From: Vitrella brassicaformis CCMP3155
Lineage: Eukaryota; Protista; Chromerida
Direction: 5' to 3'
DNA length: 64,000 bases
Assembly: GCA_001179505.1 (NCBI GenBank)
Contig: CDMY01000013.1
Span: 62,001-126,000, forward strand
In this document: positions 11,500 to 22,000 of the stretch, one piece after another
Layout: each line of letters starts with the position of its first letter
How positions within the stretch are numbered: the stretch's first letter is position 1
Notes under the pieces: generated by a model
Database searches by the model: none
Told to the model about the DNA's origin: nothing
What the model saw: the letters and a program-made list of their open reading frames with translations, nothing else
Program-made: the position numbers and the translations under genes

Positions 11500-12695
11500 T
11501 CATCGCTGTCCGCACACCACATCGATGCGCCTGACCTGCAGGCACATACCCACAACAAAGGGCCACGCATCAGCAACCGTCGCCAAACTAGCAGCCTCTT
11601 GGTTTCTCACTTGACGATGTGTTTGAGCCGCTGCCTCCGCTCCAACAGTGCCTGCAGACGATACGAGTCGTCCTGGCCGTCTGCTGCCACCACCGGATAA
11701 CCCAACAGGCTGCCGGCATGGTGGGCGCGACACAACCACCTAACATGCAGTGCACCAACATCAATCACAGTGAGTGACATCCGAGCTCAAGGCAAGGAAG
11801 GCTCAGTCATCTGATCTCACTTTCTATTAACACACCTGTGTTTCTTCTTTGCTGCGTCCGCGTCTTCCGGAGGGATGAGGCGCCTGAGTTGCTCTAAGGC
11901 CTCCTCCGCACCTCTAGTCTTCCTCACAGCCCACCTTTGCTCCGCTCCACCCTCACTGTCACTGTCACTTCCACCTCCCACCCCTGCCTCCTTCGCCAAC
12001 CGCTCCAACACCGCCAGCAGCTGATACGACTCACCCAGCCTCAGCAGACCCTCACGATTGGCCCGCTGGGTGCGAGCCTGACGAAGGAGGAAGTCGACGT
12101 ACGCCGCGGTGCCCTGCTGCTTGAGAGCCGCCTGGTCCAACATGCCGTGTGAGGAAGAGGCATCGCATGGCGAATCACGACACGTGTCTAGCACGTGGCT
12201 GAGGTGGTCGGCAATGTGTCGACTGATCTCGGGCGCCTTGGGCACTCGCAGCCGGTCGTTGAGGCGGACATACTCGTAGGGCGTGATGCCCACACCAGCA
12301 CCAGCCACCTCTTTCGGCCTCGCACCCTGCTGGACGCCCCTGCGGTCCAGAAAGCGCCTAGCAGACCGACCGAGCGTCTTGGCTGCGTCTTGCATGCGCC
12401 TCGCCTGAACGAGTCTTGCGAATCTCTTGCGCTGCAGAGCCCCTCTCCATGACGCCTGCAGACGGACCGCTGCCTCGCGCTGCGACAGCTCTGCATGCAG
12501 AAGGATCTTGCGAGGCGGCAGAGTTCTCAGGTAGGTGAGCTCCTGCTGCTTCTTGTGTAGGTCGGCTGCGATGCGCTGGCGTCGCTGGAGGAGGGCTGCG
12601 ATGCGCTGATGGCGCTTCTTGCCTCTCCACCATCGCTGAAGCTTCACTGCTGAATGGAACTGAGCCGAGGCGGCATTGGACACAATCGACGGCAT
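11500..12695 (-). CDS. IQ calmodulin-binding motif protein with coiled-coil segments
   Basis: ORF 11817-12695 carries IQ-like motifs AVKLQRWWRGKKRHQR and AVRLQASWRGALQRKRF. Two short 3' exons (about 11612-11652 and 11500-11540) have canonical splice signals. Confidence 0.75.
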
Positions 12696-14593: not shown

Positions 14594-15704
14594 TGGAAAC
14601 AAGACACATACACAGACACACAGCACAGAAACCACACACCGATGAGGGTCAATGGCATTGCAAGGGAGGGAGGAAGGAAGCGCGTGGCTGAATGGATGGA
14701 TGGATGGGCGAAGGTGTGTCTGCGCGAGTGGTCGGTGCGTGCGATTGACTGGGTGCGGTTCATGGCCGGGTGGGGGGTATGGCATGACTGGACGGAGTGG
14801 TTCGTGTGAGAGGTGTGTACAGTCAGTATTTCTCCCCTCAGTGACTTTTCGCAACGGTGGTTGCATTCGAGTGCGTGTGTGATGGATACGGTCTGGCTGG
14901 CTGCCTGCATGCCCGCGCGGGAAGGAACGAAGGACTACCGCATCAAGTTAAGTCGACGTGACGCTTTCATCCTCTCAGCACATACGTGTCTGCGCGCGCA
15001 TGCACTGCATGAGTCTCGAGTGTGAAAGTCGGAAAAAGACAGCAATTGTCATGTCAGAGGGCGACAAATAGTGGACAGCCGAGAGAGAGAGAAAGAGAGA
15101 GAGACCGACCCGACCCAAGCACCTACCATACCCACCCAGGCCAAGTATACGACACACACAGCAAGGAGAAGACAGAGCTCTACAAAAACACCTAATAGTA
15201 TCTACCTGGAATAATGGAGCCTGGATTGGATTGGCCCACCTGTCTTCTTTCAAAGTGACTGACCCAAAAGGCCGACACAGACACGTAGCCAGCCCAGCCG
15301 CAGGTGAGTGAATGGATACCCACAGACAGACAGACAGACAGACACTTACCTGCCCTCTCTCGCCAGACAGCCACACGTCAACGCAGACACAGACAGACTC
15401 ACTGACTGGTGTCCCATCTCTCTCCCCGTCCCTCCCTCCCTCTCTCTTTCTTCTCTCGCTGCTACACACCTCAACAAAGACCACCAACGAGAGGTCCGGT
15501 CCACATCACCAAAGCAACCACGGACAGTACAGACATGTAACATCTATCTAGGCTAGGCCAAAAAAAGGCATGCAATGCAGCATCACCTTTGTCCGGTCCG
15601 CTACACGGATCCCATCACACTTGCACGCTACACAGTCACGTGACGCTACACCAACACACCACACCATCCCATCCCAAAAAGGGCTCGCATCGACATCGAC
15701 AGCC

Positions 15705-16520
15705 TCACATCGCCCACACCAAAAGGGCCGCGATGCCGCCCCACACGGCGATATGCATGGCATTGCCACGCGCGCCGCTGGTGGTCTCCTCCTCGCCGTC
15801 CGTGACCTCCATATCGACGCTCTCCTCGCCCCCCTCACCGATAACACCGTCAGCCTCGGGCGCCGCAGTGGTCACCAATGGACCCTCGGTCACTGACGGA
15901 GGGAGAACAGAACAGCACATATAGGTACCTGAGCTGGAGTGTCGTGTCTGTTGACGTCACATTGTGTGTACCGGTGAGGATAAACTTCTGCTTGCGTTCG
16001 CAGTGGTCATCTTCTCCACACACGATGTAGTAGGTGCCGACCTCCTCAGGGGTCCACACAAAGCCCGGCAGCCCGGCATCGTGGTCGCCGATGTACGTCA
16101 TCTTTGACTTGTCACATGACTCGTAGGCTGCAGACACGCAGACGTTCACACCAGGCAGATGAGTGAGTGCATTGCAGGTGTGCGATGGGCGATGGCATGG
16201 TGGCCACCATGGCGTACCTTCCTCGTCGCTGGCAAGCTTGACGTCGTGGAGAGGATCATAGACAAACCTCAGGCTCTGCCCGAGGGCGATGGCCATGTCG
16301 TCGTAGACTTGGCCTTCAGGGGGGATTACTGAGACAGACAGACAGACAGACAAGCAGACGCACATTCCTGACGCCTGCATAGTGTGCAGCCCCCTGCCTG
16401 CTTCAGCTCACTCCATAGTTTGTGGCCGTCCTGAGTCACCACATCGATGATGTTTGGCTGCGCAACGGCGAGGGAGATCAGTGCGAAGACCAGGACAACA
16501 AGCAGCATCATGCCAGACAT
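15705..16520 (-). CDS. Secreted, probably GPI-anchored phytocyanin (stellacyanin-type blue copper protein)
   Basis: Four exons. Signal peptide MSGMMLLVVLVFALISLAVA. Domain: LRFVYDPLHDVKL...AYESCD...GTYYIVCGEDDHCERKQKFILT, with a C-x4-H-x4-Q loop. Followed by an acidic Thr-rich stalk and a hydrophobic C-terminus (SGARGNAMHIAVWGGIAALLVWAM*). Confidence 0.85.
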
Positions 16521-16662
16521 CGCAGAGAATTGATGAGGTGACGATGATGAGAAGGATCAGTCCTGATGGATCTTCCAAGTTGCGCGAAGCCAGTGCTGCC
16601 AGTGCTGATTCGGGCCGAGCGATCGCTCTGGCGAGGTTTCATCCGGCCACAACGTTTCAGCC
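16521..16662. promoter_or_regulatory. Putative bidirectional promoter (phytocyanin / GT47)
   Basis: About 140 bp between divergent ATGs. No specific motif identified. Confidence 0.4.
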
Positions 16663-18775
16663 ATGAGTCCGGTCGTCAACGTTCTGCAGTTTCTTTACCT
16701 TCTCCTGGACTGCACCCTTGCAGCCCACCTCCTCACTTCGCTCCGCAAACCACCCCCGCCAGCGTTTTCCGCCATCGAGCGGCTGTGTGAGGCCGAGAAC
16801 ATCCGTGTGCACATCTATCCTTTGCCGTGGGACCTCGTGGCCACTGCATTCAACGCCAACCTGACTGGCCTCTCCAGTGTGGGCGAGTTCCTCACCAGAG
16901 AGAGGGTTTTTGGCCTCCCCCTCCCGCTGCAACCTTTTTCTGCGGCTACCGCTGCAGCAGCGAGATCGGTCCTCAAGGCAGCGAAGGATGGAGAGCTGGT
17001 CGCTCTCAGCGCGCCAGTGGAGCTGGGGAAGTCTGCGGCTCTGCTGTCATTGCAGCCGAATGAGTCGTCGGCCTCTCTGGTGCTGAGGGACACCCGGCAG
17101 TTCTCTCTCGGGCGGATCTTTCATCGGCGGCTGATGGAGCTGCCGCCCAAGTGTGTGGCCGATACGGCTGAGGATGGGACGCTGTTCTTCATTCCATACT
17201 ATAGGGGTAGGTGCGATGAGATGAGTGGGACGGACAAAAGGAGAACGACAAATGTGCGTGTGTGTGAATGTGTGTGAATGTGTGTTGCTGTGTCTGCAGA
17301 GTGGTACCATAATTTGATGCCTGCGTATCACCGTGGTCAGCTGACGGCGACGACAGCCACCACCACCATACTCAACGATCTATTTGGACAAATCTCTAAT
17401 ATCTTCCGCTCAAGTAACTAACACGGACGACAAGCAAACAAGACAGACAAAGAGACACACACACACCAGAAGCCCCTTAATTTTGCCTTTACCTTCTTTT
17501 CGTTCCTTCCTGCGTCAGCTGTGCAGCTCCCTCCCCTCATCTCCTCCCCCTGCACCCCAGCCGAGAACGAACTTGCAGACCTCTTCTCAAAGGAACCCTT
17601 CAGGCACACATTCAACCGGCACGCCGGTGCCGACCACTTCATGATCTGCCCCCGCACCGCCAAATCCACGGGCGACATCTGCCACCGATTCAAGTTCCCT
17701 ACCATCACATACGAAGACCCATTCACCAGCAGAAGGAGAGAGAACGAGAAGAGAGTGTCGCAGGATGACCCGTGGGGCAACGTCATCAAGCTGGCGAAGG
17801 AGAACGGCGACATATCGGTGCCACATCCGTCATGGGTGCATCGGGAGGGCAGCGGACACATCACTGCGCTGGCGTCACAACACAGCAACGTCCAGCAGAA
17901 CGACTCCCGGCCGCTGCTGGCTGTCTATGCCGGCTCCCTGATGGAGGACAGAACCTCTTTCTTCCTCGCTTCGGTGATTGGGCTGCGGAAGGTCTTCCAG
18001 GAGGCATGTCACTCAGTCACGCGAGACGACCCGCCGTTCTTTCGTTGGCAGACGGCATCTGGGGCGCTGGAGCTGACATACAGGTCGGATCAGCGGTGTC
18101 TGGTGTACGGCTTCCAGCGGAGCGAGCTGCAGGTCGGTGTGTTGGGTTCGTTCTTCCTGAGCGAGCAGCAGAGTGCCGAGGTGGCATTCCTGTACGGCAG
18201 GAGTGTCTTCTGCCTGCAGCCGCCTGGAGACATGCCCACCAGAAAGGGTCAGGAATACACAATCCGTATGCATGTGATGATTTGGCTAATTCACTCGTCT
18301 CTATGATTGGGTTCTCGTGCATGGCATGTCTGCAGGAATTCTCGATTCGATTCTCCTGGGCTGCATCCCAGTGCTCTTTGCGCGCTCCCAATACGACTAC
18401 TGGCACCCCTTCCTCAACCTCACGGAGGCATCGATCCTCATCGACCTGCCCATCCCCTCGCCATCGGCCCTCTGCAACGCTGCTCATTCCCTCTCCTTCC
18501 CGGTCCCTTTCGTCTCGACCACATGTGCACGTGAGAAGCTGCGGCTGCGCCAGGCGGGCGAGCGCATCCTGGCTGAGCTCGAGATGGTGCCCGAGGCGAC
18601 AATAAGGGCTAAGCAGGCCTATGGGCGGAGGATAGGGCAGTACATTCAGTACAGCGTGGGAGATGGCAAAGGGCAGGGGGACAGGGACGAAGATGCGCTT
18701 TATGTCGCGTTGAGAGCGCTTGCGAGGGAGAGGGATCGGGGAGTGGAGGCGTTGAAGAGACATGCAATGGTGTGA
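16663..18775 (+). CDS. Exostosin-family (GT47) glycosyltransferase
   Basis: Hydrophobic N-terminus, then IRVHIYPLP, LFFIPYY, NRHAGADHFMI, VPHPSWVH, LLAVYAGS, SVFCLQPPGDMPTRKG|ILDSILLGCIPVLF, YWHPF, all characteristic of GT47. Confidence 0.92.
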
Positions 18776-19064
18776 ATGTGTGTGTGGATCGCACGGCACG
18801 CGGACCTACACGGATGTCTATCTCTATCTGTGCAATCACGGACAGGACAGCCCGGGGCAAATAGACCCTTTCATGCGACAGCCAGAGCACAAAGTTAGTT
18901 ATTCGACACACGGCAAACCGGCCCGTGTATGCATGCATTACATCCGTCCAAAACCACGAAACACACACACGGCACATGAGTCACAAACAAATATATCAGG
19001 CACACAAAGCGAAGCACATACATACAGGCAGGCACCGCACCCGCATAGCACATCACCCATCTAT

Positions 19065-22000
19065 CTATGAGTATCTTGGTCCCGACACCGCCCCGCGCAC
19101 ATGCGGCGGGACCGTATCAATCTTGGCCTTCTTGAGCCAACAGGTGTTCCTCAACGTCTCGTCAGCCACATTGGAGTGGTAGTGTGTGAAGAACTGACAC
19201 TTAGCCGACGACTTGCTCTGACACATCGACTGGCACTCTATCTCGGAAGTGACGTCGCGCAAAGGCATCCCGGCCATATCGTTGCCGGGGTACTCTTTGT
19301 CAGGAAGCAAACCTCCTGCACACACAGCACAGGATGATGCATCAATGAATGAGACATGAGACAGCGACCTTGGTGTGCTGTGCTCTTGCCAAAGTGCTGA
19401 CTGACCGCATCCCTTCGGCCCGGTGATGTATCCCTTGACATTGGCGTTGTGTGCGTCCTTGTCGTCCATCCGCCGTTCCCGCTTCAGGTAACACGCCTGG
19501 GCGTCCGGCCGGTCCTCGCCCTTCGTCGCGCCTCCCACGTATGTGAAGCCGTTGCAGTTGGGGCTCTGCTGGCACAGCTCCTGGCACACCAGGGGGGCGT
19601 CGATCATCACCTCACCCCTGGCCGACGGGCGCTTCAAAGCTTCCCCCTTGATGGGCATGTTGGGCAGATCGGGGCCTTCGAAAGCAGTGTCCTCTTCCAG
19701 ACAGCCTGGTGGTCGGCCACACACAGAGACAGCAGGAAGGATGACCATCTCGTTCCATGTCTCCCCTCCGTGTTGTGTTTCTGCTTACTGCAGTATTTGG
19801 GACCGATGACATCGAGTGGCGAGTTGGTCGGCTCGACAACCTCCCTGCCGTATGCCGCCGTGAGAGTGCACATGTTAGTGTCCTCTCGCCAGTGAAAGCC
19901 CCTGCAGTCCCGCACTTGCTGGCAGCGGTACTGACAGAGGATTGCCGAGGTGACCTTTCCCTCGGGCGGCACGCGAGACAGAGGCCGAAGACTCCTGAAC
20001 GCACTCCACATGCACGGCTCTGCAAATGAAGAAACACATCAGTCAACCCCACCCCCAGCACACGCACAGAGATGGGTGTAGTGTATTGATGTGTCTGCCC
20101 ACCGTCTTTGGAGTATGCCGGCAGAACAAGGAAGCTTTCCCCGCCCGGGCCAGCCCCGGGGTTGATGGCGCCCTGCCACACCTCCACCTCACACAGCGAC
20201 AGAATCCGCCCCTCCTCGCCCTCCCCAGTCAGTTCAGGCAGCACCAGCCAGACGTACTGTCCCACAGGCAGGTTGCTGCAGTTGAGCTGCGTGAACTCGC
20301 CTGGCGGGAAGTCGGGGGGCGTCACGTCCACAACGCACTGGGCGTTGGCGGGGTCGTCGTAAGAAGACACGCTGGGCCCCACATACACCTCCACGCCATC
20401 GATCCTGGGGGAAGGAAGAATGGGAGAGCTGACAATCAATGGTGTGTGTCGTCTGTTTGTGCGGTCTCTGCGCGCACCAGTCGGTGTGTGTCTTGCGGTT
20501 CAGAATTCTGACTGCTCCGATGGTGTACGGCCTCGTCAGCTCCACTCGCCACCAGGGGCGCTTGCCAGGCAGCTGCAGACACAAGGTTCACACACACATC
20601 GTGCACAGAGGAGATTGCATGGGTGTGGATTGTAACCGTCTCAGAGCAGAGTGTGGATGAGAGCGTGCCATCGACGGCAAGGCTGCTGGCGTGGGGGACA
20701 CTTGCCTCCTGCTCCTCCTCCTCCTCCTGGACCGGCCTGTTGGGATCGAGCTCTGCTGGCGAGGAAGTTGTGCTCACGACTGGCTTGGGGAAGTGATCTG
20801 TCGGCCTGCAGGCCACACATCACACCACGCAGACCGGCTTTGTTGCTCCGGAATGTGAGCTCACATACGTACCTCACTCACCTGTGGAAAGCGAGATTGG
20901 GTGGAATGGCTTTGAGTCTCAGGTTCCTCTCCCTCTGTATGGCCTTGAGTTCGTGTTCATAGTACCCCAGGACCTCCACCTCACACAGCGACAGGACCGT
21001 GCTGGGGTCGCCAGGCATGGCCACCCACACGTATCGACCTTCAGGCCACCCGAAGTCAGCCAGCTTCTGGCACTCGATAAGGGTGGTGCCGAACATCTCC
21101 CAGTTGCTCTGCACGCCGCCCTTGGGGATGCAGGGCAGGTTGCCCGGCGATCGGAAGGCGCAGGCGTTGTTGCCTATCCAGATCTCGGCTCCACGGAGGC
21201 TGGGAGGGAAGAGAGACAGCATGCCATGCTCGTGAAGTGAGATGCGCGAGGGTATGTTTCCCTCTTGTTCTTGTCTGTACCGGTCCCTGGCCGTGATGGA
21301 GACCCCCCAGACGGGGTGAGAGTCCTTTAGGTCGACGCGCCACCATGGGTCCCATCCTATGTCCTGGGGGTTATGACAGACAGGTGTCATCCGTCTGAGT
21401 GGTCGGCCATTGCCCTCTATGCTCACGCACCGCCACAGTCTTGGTACACGACGGCGAGCTGCCAACTCGCGACATGGACTTCTGGCCATCGACGGGCAGC
21501 CACGCCTCGCTCCGCTCAGATGTCGAGCTCTGACTCGCCTCCCTGCATACACACACACACACACACACACACGATCACGCCTGTGTCTGTCATCTATCTC
21601 CCCCACGTACTCACTTCTCCAGGGCAAAATTGGTCCTAGGCGGCGGTGTGGGAAACGGCTCCTGCAGGGCTTCCTCTTTCCATGTCAGCGGCCCTCTGGT
21701 GGTGGTCGATGTGGTCTCCTCGCCAGGCCTGGCCGTCGCCCCTGGTGGCAAAGGTGTGGTGCTGACATTCTCCGTCGGGACGAATGGGAACTGTACGGTG
21801 CCGTTCTCGCGGTCGGTGGGCGGGATCTCGCCGACCTCTGTGCCCTGGCACATGCAGATGAAGGCCACCTGCTCGTACTTGGCGGTGGCCGGGCAGAAGG
21901 AGGTGGCGAAGGAGGCGTTGAGCTGCTTCAGGTCGCAGTACGTCTCGCCGTTGCACTTTTCCCTAGACACAAACCACGGAGAGACACATAGAGAGCGGAG

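What the first reader, a model, noticed from the sequence alone, without database searches (positions are those of the whole stretch)
15705..16520. Plant-type stellacyanin (blue copper protein) with a complete Cu site and GPI signal in an alveolate
Seen: His in PLHDV, then YYIVC-GEDD-H-CERK-Q, giving His/Cys/His/Gln ligands with exact C-x4-H-x4-Q spacing. The second Cys pair is present (YESC and HC). The protein has a signal peptide, a Thr/Glu stalk and a GPI-like tail. Known: phytocyanins are regarded as mainly a plant family, a Gln axial ligand defines stellacyanins, and many are GPI-anchored cell-wall proteins. Inference: an extracellular redox or wall-modifying copper protein in a chromerid, gained by HGT/EGT or retained from a wider ancestral distribution. 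Its three introns in host style show it is integrated, not contamination.
Basis: partly seen in the sequence, partly recalled or inferred. Interest (0 to 1): 0.78.

Follow-up and report, generated by a model that had tools for sequence, protein, structure and literature searches.

The report
Phytocyanin-type blue copper protein in Vitrella
The gene model is already in the public genome annotation, and the family also occurs in several non-plant protists, so this is a solid but fairly ordinary find.

Summary
Window 16520-15705 (minus strand) holds a four-exon gene with three phase-1 GT-AG introns. Spliced transcript contigs from two or three studies match it exactly.

- **Protein:** The 187-aa product passes Pfam Cu_bind_like (PF02298). 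Its His64/Cys110/His115/Gln120 and Cys78-Cys116 align residue for residue with the copper ligands and disulfide of cucumber stellacyanin.
- **Fold:** The modelled domain fits umecyanin, mavicyanin and stellacyanin best (Z 13.5-13.9).
- **Ends:** A signal-peptide-like N-terminus and a GPI-like C-terminal tail are present by heuristics only.
- **Organism:** The genome is Vitrella brassicaformis CCMP3155. The public assembly annotates this same gene span with a 187-aa product.
- **Paralog:** A two-domain paralog shares all three intron positions. UniProt already names it "Phytocyanin domain-containing protein".
- **Relatives:** They occur in Entosiphon, Prasinococcus, many marine protist transcripts and, per the literature, a choanoflagellate. 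The "plant family" premise is therefore weak.
- **Origin:** Transfer versus ancient inheritance is unresolved. An AU test (p = 0.64) does not reject grouping with plants.
- **Function:** Some relatives are fused to PHM/DBH-type copper monooxygenases or multicopper oxidases. This hints at a role as an extracellular electron carrier.

Verdict: a new member of a known kind, of modest interest.

The parts
16521..16607 (-). 5' UTR as far as the transcript contigs reach
   Evidence: Spliced contigs begin at 16593-16607.
16412..16520 (-). Exon 1. Start codon at 16520-16518. Signal-peptide-like residues 1-20 (MSGMMLLVVLVFALISLAVA|QP). Start of the mature domain, ending after Trp36.
   Evidence: Translation. 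Hydrophobic core scores 3.7 on the Kyte-Doolittle scale, and Ala sits at positions -3 and -1. Transcript alignment.
16329..16411 (-). Intron 1: 83 nt, GT-AG, phase 1. Contains a (CAGA)n-type repeat.
   Evidence: Absent from the transcript contigs. The paralog has an intron at the same position and phase.
16218..16328 (-). Exon 2: first half of the cupredoxin domain, with ligand His64 (codon 16248-16246) in PLHDV.
   Evidence: Translation. Aligns with His46 of cucumber stellacyanin. This position is invariant in alignment A2.
16128..16217 (-). Intron 2: 90 nt, GT-AG, phase 1. It happens to be open in frame.
   Evidence: Joint 16127/16218 seen in three runs. The paralog has an intron at the same EE|A|Y position.
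15972..16127 (-). Exon 3: second half of the domain. Holds Cys78 (16116-14) and the ligand loop Cys110 (16020-18), His115 (16005-03), Cys116 (16002-00) and Gln120 (15990-88).
   Evidence: Translation. These residues align with Cys60, Cys89, His94, Cys95 and Gln99 of stellacyanin. Pfam match.
15893..15971 (-). Intron 3: 79 nt, GT-AG, phase 1.
   Evidence: Joint 15892/15972 seen in three runs. The paralog has an intron at the same L(T/N)|V|TE position. This intron is only 59% identical to the related contig L003, against 95-99% for the exons.
15705..15892 (-). Exon 4. Acidic Glu/Asp/Gly-rich linker (residues ~127-161). Small-residue stretch TTSGARGNA (candidate GPI attachment region, 15779-15759). 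Uncharged hydrophobic tail HIAVWGGIAALLVWAM (15755-15708). Stop codon 15707-15705.
   Evidence: Translation. Composition and tail hydrophobicity of 2.4. The model has low pLDDT from residue ~130 onwards. The paralog ends in a similar ...ATSGA...hydrophobic tail.
15461..15704 (-). 3' UTR, minimum extent.
   Evidence: Transcript contigs are continuous to 15461. The stretch beyond is repeat-masked in the reads tool.

Best explanation
The gene encodes a small secreted type-1 (blue) copper protein of the phytocyanin family in Vitrella brassicaformis. After signal-peptide removal, a ~105-residue cupredoxin domain would bind one copper through His64, Cys110, His115 and an axial Gln120. This is the stellacyanin-type ligand set. 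A Cys78-Cys116 disulfide would brace the ligand loop. An acidic flexible linker and a C-terminal hydrophobic signal most likely tether the domain to the outer face of the plasma membrane, or to the cell or sporangium wall, through a GPI anchor. There it would act as a one-electron carrier for extracellular oxidoreductases. The most likely partner class is copper enzymes such as PHM/DBH-type monooxygenases or multicopper oxidases. Shown here: the gene structure, expression and splicing, family membership, ligand and disulfide alignment, and predicted fold. Inferred: copper binding, GPI anchoring, surface location and electron-transfer role. Weakly inferred (about 25%): the identity of the partner.
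For: - **Splicing and expression:**
- **Family match:** PF02298 at 25.4 bits against a 20.8 cut-off.
- **Solved relatives:** the single sequence hits mavicyanin (2e-4) and stellacyanin (5e-3), with all ligands and both cysteines aligned. A profile of relatives hits stellacyanin 6e-19, mavicyanin 4e-17, umecyanin 6e-16, cucumber basic protein 2.5e-12 and plantacyanin 6.6e-12. Every other cupredoxin scores 2e-5 or worse.
- **Fold:** the AlphaFold model has pLDDT above 92 for residues 30-125. The best structural matches are umecyanin and mavicyanin (Z 13.9, rmsd 1.9-2.0 A) and stellacyanin (Z 13.5). Ephrins score 8-9.4 and plastocyanin or pseudoazurin 8 or less.
- **Conservation across relatives:** W, F, His, both disulfide Cys, the ligand Cys and the second His are invariant in 37 diverse relatives. 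Of 279 distinct related domains, 190 carry His/Cys/His/Gln and 52 carry His/Cys/His/Met.
- **Constraint:** against a 93%-identical environmental relative, the exons are 95-99% identical with no indels. The introns are 59-94% identical with indels. Codon changes are 9 synonymous to 6 non-synonymous, and no ligand is changed.
- **Ends:** hydrophobic N- and C-termini with a small-residue stretch before the tail. 74 of 158 relatives have a similar uncharged C-terminal tail.
- **Partner hint:** the best single-domain match outside Vitrella (56 bits) sits in a Cu2_monooxygen + Cu2_monoox_C fusion. Other relatives are DOMON + Cu2 monooxygenase + 2 cupredoxin domains + GPI-like tail, or cupredoxin + three-domain multicopper oxidase.
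Against: - No metal-binding, spectroscopic or localisation data exist.
- No dedicated signal-peptide or GPI predictor was available. The C-terminal segment could be a plain membrane anchor.
- The linker lacks the Pro/Hyp-rich glycomodule and the N-glycan sites of plant stellacyanins.
- The Pfam score is only about 5 bits above the cut-off.
- Fusion partners are varied (Hint, fasciclin, rhodanese, trypsin and others). Only 3 of 33 long relatives carry the monooxygenase domains, and physiological partners are unknown even for plant phytocyanins.
- The model's copper-site geometry could not be inspected.
Confidence: 0.72

Rival explanations
1. It is a surface adhesion, recognition or signalling protein that uses the cupredoxin fold as a scaffold, as plant early-nodulin-like proteins and animal ephrins do. 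Redox chemistry would play no real part.
For: It has GPI-like surface architecture. Ephrin ectodomains are the next-best structural class after phytocyanins and one hemocyanin domain (Z 8-9.4). Some relatives carry adhesion-type modules such as fasciclin, fn2 and Hint. About 10% of related domains have lost ligands.
Against: All four ligands and the disulfide are intact here, in the paralog's first domain and in the 93%-identical relative. Ephrins and ENODLs are defined by having lost them. There was no ephrin Pfam hit even at E = 10.
Confidence: 0.12
2. It is a copper-handling protein at the cell surface, serving copper buffering, sensing or delivery to an importer or to a secreted cuproenzyme. 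It would not be an electron carrier.
For: It has a complete Cu site and an acidic Glu/Asp-rich linker that could attract cations. Relatives co-occur with copper enzymes in fusion proteins.
Against: A buried His2Cys type-1 site with a Gln axial ligand is, in every solved relative, an electron-transfer site and not an exchangeable one (established knowledge of cupredoxins; matches).
Confidence: 0.1
3. It is a plastid or thylakoid-lumen carrier that stands in for plastocyanin or cytochrome c6. The N-terminal signal peptide would be the first part of a bipartite plastid-targeting leader.
For: Chromerid plastid proteins do start with a signal peptide (established knowledge). One genome paper treats algal 'phytocyanin' genes as cytochrome c6 substitutes (bioRxiv 10.1101/2021.10.25.465678).
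Against: The cupredoxin domain starts right after the predicted cleavage site, leaving no room for a transit peptide. A C-terminal hydrophobic tail and an acidic stalk are present. Plastocyanins match far worse than phytocyanins: 5e-4 against 6e-19, and Z of 8 or less against 13.9.
Confidence: 0.03
4. A rival about origin only: the Vitrella genes were acquired from the green lineage by endosymbiotic or horizontal transfer, and were not inherited from an ancient eukaryote-wide family.
For: The AU test does not reject a tree that joins the Vitrella pair with the clade holding all labelled land-plant domains. That constrained tree even had the higher likelihood (p-AU 0.64). A green alga, Prasinococcus, also has the family.
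Against: The free tree places the pair with Entosiphon and marine protist sequences (support 92) and places plants apart (94). The best single-domain matches are non-plant: 56-44 bits against about 37 for members of the plant clade. Three introns are shared by two dispersed paralogs, and composition matches the host, so any transfer would be old. No Chromera or other alveolate relative could be identified among the labelled hits, so the distribution is not mapped.
Confidence: 0.25

Closest known systems
Cucumber stellacyanin (1JER), zucchini mavicyanin (1WS7/1WS8) and horseradish umecyanin (1X9R): stellacyanin-subfamily phytocyanins
   Same: Same Pfam family. Same His/Cys/His/Gln ligands with C-x4-H-x4-Q spacing. 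Same disulfide linking the Cys next to the second His to a Cys after the first His. Best sequence matches and best structural matches (Z 13.5-13.9). Secretory leader.
   Different: Only 22-26% identity over the structural alignment. The linker is acidic, not a Pro/Hyp/Ser-rich glycomodule, and has no N-glycosylation sequons. The host is an alveolate alga. Placement inside the plant stellacyanin clade is not shown.
Vitrella brassicaformis CEM20958.1 / UniProt A0A0G4FZK1, 'Phytocyanin domain-containing protein' (P0002)
   Same: Same genome assembly. Its first domain is 54-56% identical. All three intron positions and phases are shared. Same signal peptide, acidic stalk and ...TSGA...hydrophobic tail layout.
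   Different: It has two cupredoxin domains (338 aa) and lies on another contig. The second domain is divergent, with an extra Cys-rich insertion before the ligand loop.
Plantacyanin and cucumber basic protein (1F56, 2CBP)
   Same: Same family, fold and disulfide.
   Different: They have an axial Met where this protein has Gln, and no stalk or anchor. Their matches are weaker (Z 10.7-12.3).
Ephrin receptor-binding domain
   Same: Cupredoxin-like fold. Often GPI-anchored at the cell surface. Z 8-9.4 to the model. The literature derives ephrins from monodomain cupredoxins (PMC6485061).
   Different: Ephrins have lost the copper ligands, whereas this protein keeps all of them. No sequence-level match.
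Plastocyanin
   Same: Single-domain type-1 copper electron carrier.
   Different: It has an axial Met, lacks the phytocyanin disulfide and sits in the thylakoid lumen. Its matches are much weaker (5e-4; Z 7.7 or less).

Membership tests
Phytocyanin family (Pfam PF02298 Cu_bind_like) | Sequence match to the family model above the curated threshold | tested here: met
   25.4 bits against a gathering score of 20.8, E = 1.4e-5, for the spliced product P0001. The intron-containing reference alone gave 18.6 bits, and single exons gave nothing. 28 of 37 aligned relatives also match PF02298.
Phytocyanin family (Pfam PF02298 Cu_bind_like) | Cupredoxin beta-sandwich closest to solved phytocyanins and not to other cupredoxins | tested here: met
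   Model pLDDT is above 92 over residues 30-125. Umecyanin and mavicyanin Z 13.9, stellacyanin 13.5, cucumber basic protein 12.3, plantacyanin 10.7. The next classes score 9.9 or less. Foldseek gives the same order.
Phytocyanin family (Pfam PF02298 Cu_bind_like) | Type-1 copper ligands: N-terminal His, then Cys-x4-His-x4-(Gln/Met) in the C-terminal loop | tested here: met
   His64, Cys110, His115 and Gln120 align with His46, Cys89, His94 and Gln99 of 1JER. The ligand His, Cys and His are invariant in A2.
Phytocyanin family (Pfam PF02298 Cu_bind_like) | Family-specific disulfide joining the Cys next to the second His ligand to a Cys downstream of the first His | tested here: met
   Cys78 and Cys116 align with Cys60 and Cys95 of 1JER. 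Both are invariant in A2, and Cys116 is present in 279 of 279 domains. The bond itself is inferred.
Phytocyanin family (Pfam PF02298 Cu_bind_like) | Actual binding of one Cu with a blue (~600 nm) spectrum | not testable with these tools
   Needs recombinant protein, UV-vis and EPR.
Stellacyanin subfamily (as defined for plants) | Axial Gln in place of Met | tested here: met
   Gln120 (CAG, 15990-15988) aligns with Gln99 of 1JER.
Stellacyanin subfamily (as defined for plants) | C-terminal Pro/Hyp/Ser-rich glycoprotein (AGP-like) module and N-glycosylation | tested here: not met
   The linker has 8 Glu, 3 Asp, 6 Gly, 3 Thr and only 2 Pro in 33 residues. There is no N-x-S/T sequon anywhere in the protein.
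Stellacyanin subfamily (as defined for plants) | GPI-anchor signal: small omega-site residues, a spacer and a terminal hydrophobic segment | tested here: inconclusive
   The TTSGARGNA stretch is followed by a 16-residue uncharged hydrophobic end, and the paralog shows the same pattern. No GPI predictor or experiment was available.
Stellacyanin subfamily (as defined for plants) | Phylogenetic placement inside the plant stellacyanin clade | tested here: inconclusive
   The free tree puts it with protist sequences. The AU test does not reject union with the plant-containing clade (p = 0.64). Only 109 alignment columns were usable.
Early nodulin-like / ephrin-like copper-free cupredoxins | Loss of one or more copper ligands | tested here: not met
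   All four ligands are present, so it is not filed here.

The most novel reading that the evidence does not exclude
Phytocyanin-type cupredoxins may not be a plant invention. They may be an old, eukaryote-wide family of GPI-tethered cell-surface electron carriers, whose natural partners are extracellular copper oxygenases and oxidases (PHM/DBH-type monooxygenases with DOMON, and multicopper oxidases). The protist fusion proteins found here point that way. If so, Vitrella, which an unchecked scan note says also encodes a secreted PHM/DBH-like protein, would be a simple unicellular system for finding the long-unknown physiological partner of phytocyanins. A more remote extension (under 5%): such an endogenous GPI-anchored cupredoxin in the free-living relatives of Apicomplexa bears on the disputed origin of the cupredoxin-like SRS/6-Cys surface antigens, which have so far been tied to animal ephrins.
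Probability: 0.2. Interest if true: 0.6.

Novelty: new member of a known kind. Interest (0 to 1): 0.33.

Why it matters
Plant-science papers still call phytocyanins "plant-specific" (for example PMC4499708). This gene, its paralog and about 180 relatives from non-plant sources show that the family, including the Gln-axial "stellacyanin" site and the GPI-like architecture, reaches well beyond plants. That is a useful correction, but sequence databases already reflect it: the paralog is auto-named as a phytocyanin-domain protein, and PF02298 has been noted in a choanoflagellate. The more valuable by-product is the set of natural fusions of this domain to copper monooxygenases and multicopper oxidases. 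They give a testable hypothesis for what phytocyanins donate electrons to, which is unknown even in plants.

Tried and rejected
- The in-frame reference spanning exon 2, intron 2 and exon 3 gave a sub-threshold hit.
- **The joined product was never typed.** Whole-protein work used P0001, a database protein returned that equals the spliced product from Met4. It also used the transcript reference L001:88-648. Exons were concatenated only inside scripts, for codon counting and intron-phase bookkeeping, and were not sent to any search.
- **The three word-index searches** were too insensitive to give taxon-labelled relatives.
I did not repeat it, so presence in prokaryotes is untested.
- **Taxon labels for metagenomic relatives** via contig look-ups yielded only sample accessions. 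I could not establish whether Chromera, dinoflagellates or apicomplexans have members.
- **I first read the Vitrella hit P0002 as an ortholog** from "the other chromerid". One search showed the window itself is Vitrella, so P0002 is a paralog.
- **The tree suggested separation from plants**, but the AU test did not back this, so I dropped that claim.
- **Plastid targeting and contamination** were considered and rejected.
- **The chromerid genome paper** does not mention cupredoxin, plastocyanin or blue copper.
- **Literature searches** pairing phytocyanin with dinoflagellate, diatom or phytoplankton found only the Pelagomonas preprint.
- **The copper-site geometry of the model** could not be measured, because coordinates are not exposed.

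Full report
**Observation**

On the minus strand of the window, a start codon at 16520 opens a gene of four exons: 16520-16412, 16328-16218, 16127-15972 and 15892-15705. They are separated by three GT-AG introns of 83, 90 and 79 nt, all in phase 1.

- a hydrophobic leader (MSGMMLLVVLVFALISLAVA|QP);
- PLHDV;
- YESC;
- YYIVCGEDDHCERKQKF;
- an acidic linker;
- a terminal ...TTSGARGNAMHIAVWGGIAALLVWAM.

**The splicing is real**

- A word search with the in-frame reference window:15973-16326 returned a 184-aa database protein, P0001, that is exactly the spliced product from Met4.
- That protein is encoded without interruption on two transcript contigs, Logan SRR646408 and JGI 3300017297.
- Aligned to the window, both contigs are 100% identical and lack precisely the three predicted introns.
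- Laying public runs on the region showed the same joints in contigs of three runs from two studies, with CT..AC ends on the plus strand (GT..AG for the gene). A DNA run carried the unspliced form.
- The ligand loop lies wholly inside exon 3, and splicing does not disturb it.

**Handling of the spliced model**

The joined sequence was never typed. All whole-protein analyses used P0001 or the transcript reference L001:88-648. Exons were concatenated only inside scripts, to count codon changes and intron phases.

**What the protein is**

- **Pfam.** P0001 passes Cu_bind_like (PF02298) at 25.4 bits against a 20.8 cut-off.
- **Solved structures, single sequence.** The only meaningful hits are the three stellacyanin-type phytocyanins: mavicyanin 2e-4, cucumber stellacyanin 5e-3 and umecyanin 0.11.
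- **Ligand alignment.** In full-length numbering, His64, Cys78, Cys110, His115, Cys116 and Gln120 sit on stellacyanin's His46, Cys60, Cys89, His94, Cys95 and Gln99. Those are its four copper ligands and its disulfide.
- **Solved structures, profile.** A profile built from 37 diverse relatives (A2) hits stellacyanin at 6e-19, mavicyanin at 4e-17, umecyanin at 6e-16, cucumber basic protein at 2.5e-12 and plantacyanin at 6.6e-12. Every other cupredoxin class scores 2e-5 or worse.
- **Model.** An AlphaFold model made with A2 is confident over the domain, with pLDDT above 92 for residues 30-125, and disordered afterwards.
- **Structural ranking.** Foldseek and VIA-align both rank umecyanin, mavicyanin and stellacyanin first (Z 13.5-13.9, rmsd about 2 A over about 100 residues). 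Cucumber basic protein (12.3) and plantacyanin (10.7) follow, then a hemocyanin cupredoxin-like domain (9.9), ephrins (8-9.4) and pseudoazurin or plastocyanin (8 or less).

Membership in the phytocyanin family with a stellacyanin-type site is therefore well supported. Membership in the plant stellacyanin subfamily in the strict sense is not. The linker is Glu/Asp/Gly-rich with two prolines and no N-glycosylation sequon, so it is not an arabinogalactan-like module.

The signal peptide and GPI signal are consistent with simple rules: a hydrophobic core, Ala at positions -3 and -1, a small-residue stretch, and then a 16-residue uncharged hydrophobic terminus. No dedicated predictor was available for either.

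**Organism and public status**

Earlier notes of this scan said other pieces of this genome are Vitrella brassicaformis, and I tested that.
- The 187-aa product read from the transcript contig is the product of an annotated gene in NCBI assembly GCA_001179505.1, contig CDMY01000013.1.
- The gene span there is 816 nt, exactly 15705-16520 of the window. It lies next to an Exostosin_GT47 gene, as it does in the window.
- The same assembly holds CEM20958.1, which its record labels Vitrella brassicaformis CCMP3155.
- GC content (59%) and (CAGA)n repeats also match.

So the exact gene model is already public, with a precomputed PF02298 hit.

The best relative in 1.84 billion cluster representatives is P0002 (E = 7.6e-33; its first domain is 54-56% identical). 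P0002 is CEM20958.1, which UniProt names "Phytocyanin domain-containing protein". It lies on another contig of the same genome, so it is a paralog. It has two cupredoxin domains and the same leader, acidic stalk and ...TSGA...hydrophobic tail plan. All three introns of the window gene are shared with it in position and phase: after the conserved Trp, at EE|A|Y, and at L(T/N)|V|TE. Together with the host-like composition, this rules out contamination and recent insertion.

**Constraint**

A metagenome contig (ENA ERZ893784, L003) carries a 93%-identical syntenic copy.
- Exons are 95-99% identical with no indels.
- Introns are 59-94% identical with indels.
- Codon differences are 9 synonymous to 6 non-synonymous.
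- Only two replacements fall in the domain, and none falls at a ligand.

**Distribution and origin**

The exhaustive search found 185 relatives at E of 1e-3 or better.
- Hits that carry an organism label include the euglenozoan Entosiphon sulcatum (three proteins) and land plants. The green alga Prasinococcus was returned by a separate word-index search.
- An MMETSP transcript, Tara and MERC marine eukaryote sequences and many metatranscriptome contigs carry no organism label.
- Many relatives are tandem arrays of two to six domains.
- 74 of 158 have an uncharged hydrophobic C-terminus.
- Among 279 distinct domains, 190 have His/Cys/His/Gln and 52 have His/Cys/His/Met. The Gln-axial state is the common one in this set.

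The plant literature calls phytocyanins plant-specific, with one member in Chlamydomonas (PMC4499708). Other papers record a PF02298 protein in the choanoflagellate Salpingoeca rosetta (PMC6993872) and "phytocyanin" genes in Pelagomonas. I found no paper on chromerid or other alveolate phytocyanins.

A quick maximum-likelihood tree was built from 153 domains and 109 alignment columns.
- It joins the window protein to the paralog's first domain (support 99).
- It places the pair in a clade with Entosiphon and marine protist sequences (92).
- It places all labelled plant domains in a separate clade (94).

However, an AU test does not reject a tree that unites the Vitrella pair with the plant-containing clade (p = 0.64). 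That constrained tree had the better likelihood. By single-domain score, the nearest non-Vitrella matches are non-plant: 56-44 bits against about 37 for plant-clade members.

My reading is that the family is clearly not confined to plants. Whether Vitrella inherited it vertically or took it from a green-lineage donor long ago is undecided. I could not label enough hits to say whether Chromera, dinoflagellates or apicomplexans have it.

**How it probably works**

All solved relatives are one-electron carriers with a buried type-1 copper site. The architecture here points to the outer face of the plasma membrane or the wall.

A clue to the partner comes from natural fusions among the relatives.
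- The closest non-Vitrella domain is the C-terminal part of a protein with Cu2_monooxygen and Cu2_monoox_C domains.
- Another relative is DOMON + Cu2 monooxygenase + two cupredoxin domains + a GPI-like tail.
- Another is a cupredoxin fused to a three-domain multicopper oxidase.
- In a census of 33 long relatives, copper monooxygenase (3) and multicopper oxidase (2) were the most frequent enzymatic partners. Hint, rhodanese, fasciclin, trypsin and others also occur.

An unchecked first-reader note reports a secreted PHM/DBH-like protein elsewhere in this genome. I therefore favour an extracellular electron shuttle feeding copper oxygenases or oxidases. I mark the partner as weakly inferred.

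The rivals are less likely, for the reasons given in their entries: a copper-independent adhesion or signalling role, copper buffering or delivery, and a plastid carrier.

**Verdict**

The identification is right, and the chromerid guess is right. The evolutionary framing ("plant-type", HGT/EGT) is only partly supported. The gene is already present, and its family recognised, in public databases. It is a new member of a known kind, of modest interest, with an interesting side lead in the fusion proteins.

Noticed in passing
window 16663-18800 (+), and L003 538-1293: A GT47 exostosin-like glycosyltransferase gene is transcribed divergently from the copper-protein gene. The two start codons are only 142 bp apart. 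Two exon ORFs hit PF03016 at 31.6 and 23.3 bits. The public annotation lists a 608-aa Exostosin_GT47 product, and the pairing is kept in the 93%-identical metagenome contig. They may share a bidirectional promoter for two surface or wall-related genes.
   Followed up: partly
P0024 (locus L007 304-2433), P0036, P0057, P0065: Environmental relatives fuse the phytocyanin-like domain to other modules. Seen were a PHM/DBH-type copper monooxygenase (with or without DOMON), a three-domain multicopper oxidase, and a Hint autoprocessing module. These are possible Rosetta-stone evidence for the unknown redox partners of phytocyanins.
   Followed up: partly
L003 (ENA ERZ893784), runs X12-X16: A contig 93% identical to 3.1 kb of the window, and partial word matches in marine sediment metagenomes, suggest uncultured close relatives of Vitrella in marine samples.
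   Followed up: partly
P0019, P0032, P0044, P0049 (C-termini): One well-supported clade of relatives ends in a dockerin-like or EF-hand-like motif (...D(V/L)xDLLxxLxxFGxxC) where others have a GPI-like tail.
   Followed up: no
L008 8001-9797 (P0173, ENA ERZ28548078, 141-kb contig): A protein with four tandem domains sits on a long contig packed with short ORFs that have no Pfam hits. Its 90%-identity cluster representative P0020 shows CxxxxHCxxxH (axial His) loops. The host could be a picoeukaryote or a giant virus; it was not identified.
   Followed up: no
window 19065-19748 (-) and 11817-12695 (-): Neighbouring ORFs carry two PAN/Apple domains (56 bits) and an IQ calmodulin-binding motif, respectively.
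   Followed up: no
window 16324-16363 and 15320-15350: (CAGA)n/(GACA)n microsatellites lie inside intron 1 and downstream of the gene. The same repeat type is frequent on the other Vitrella contig examined.
   Followed up: no
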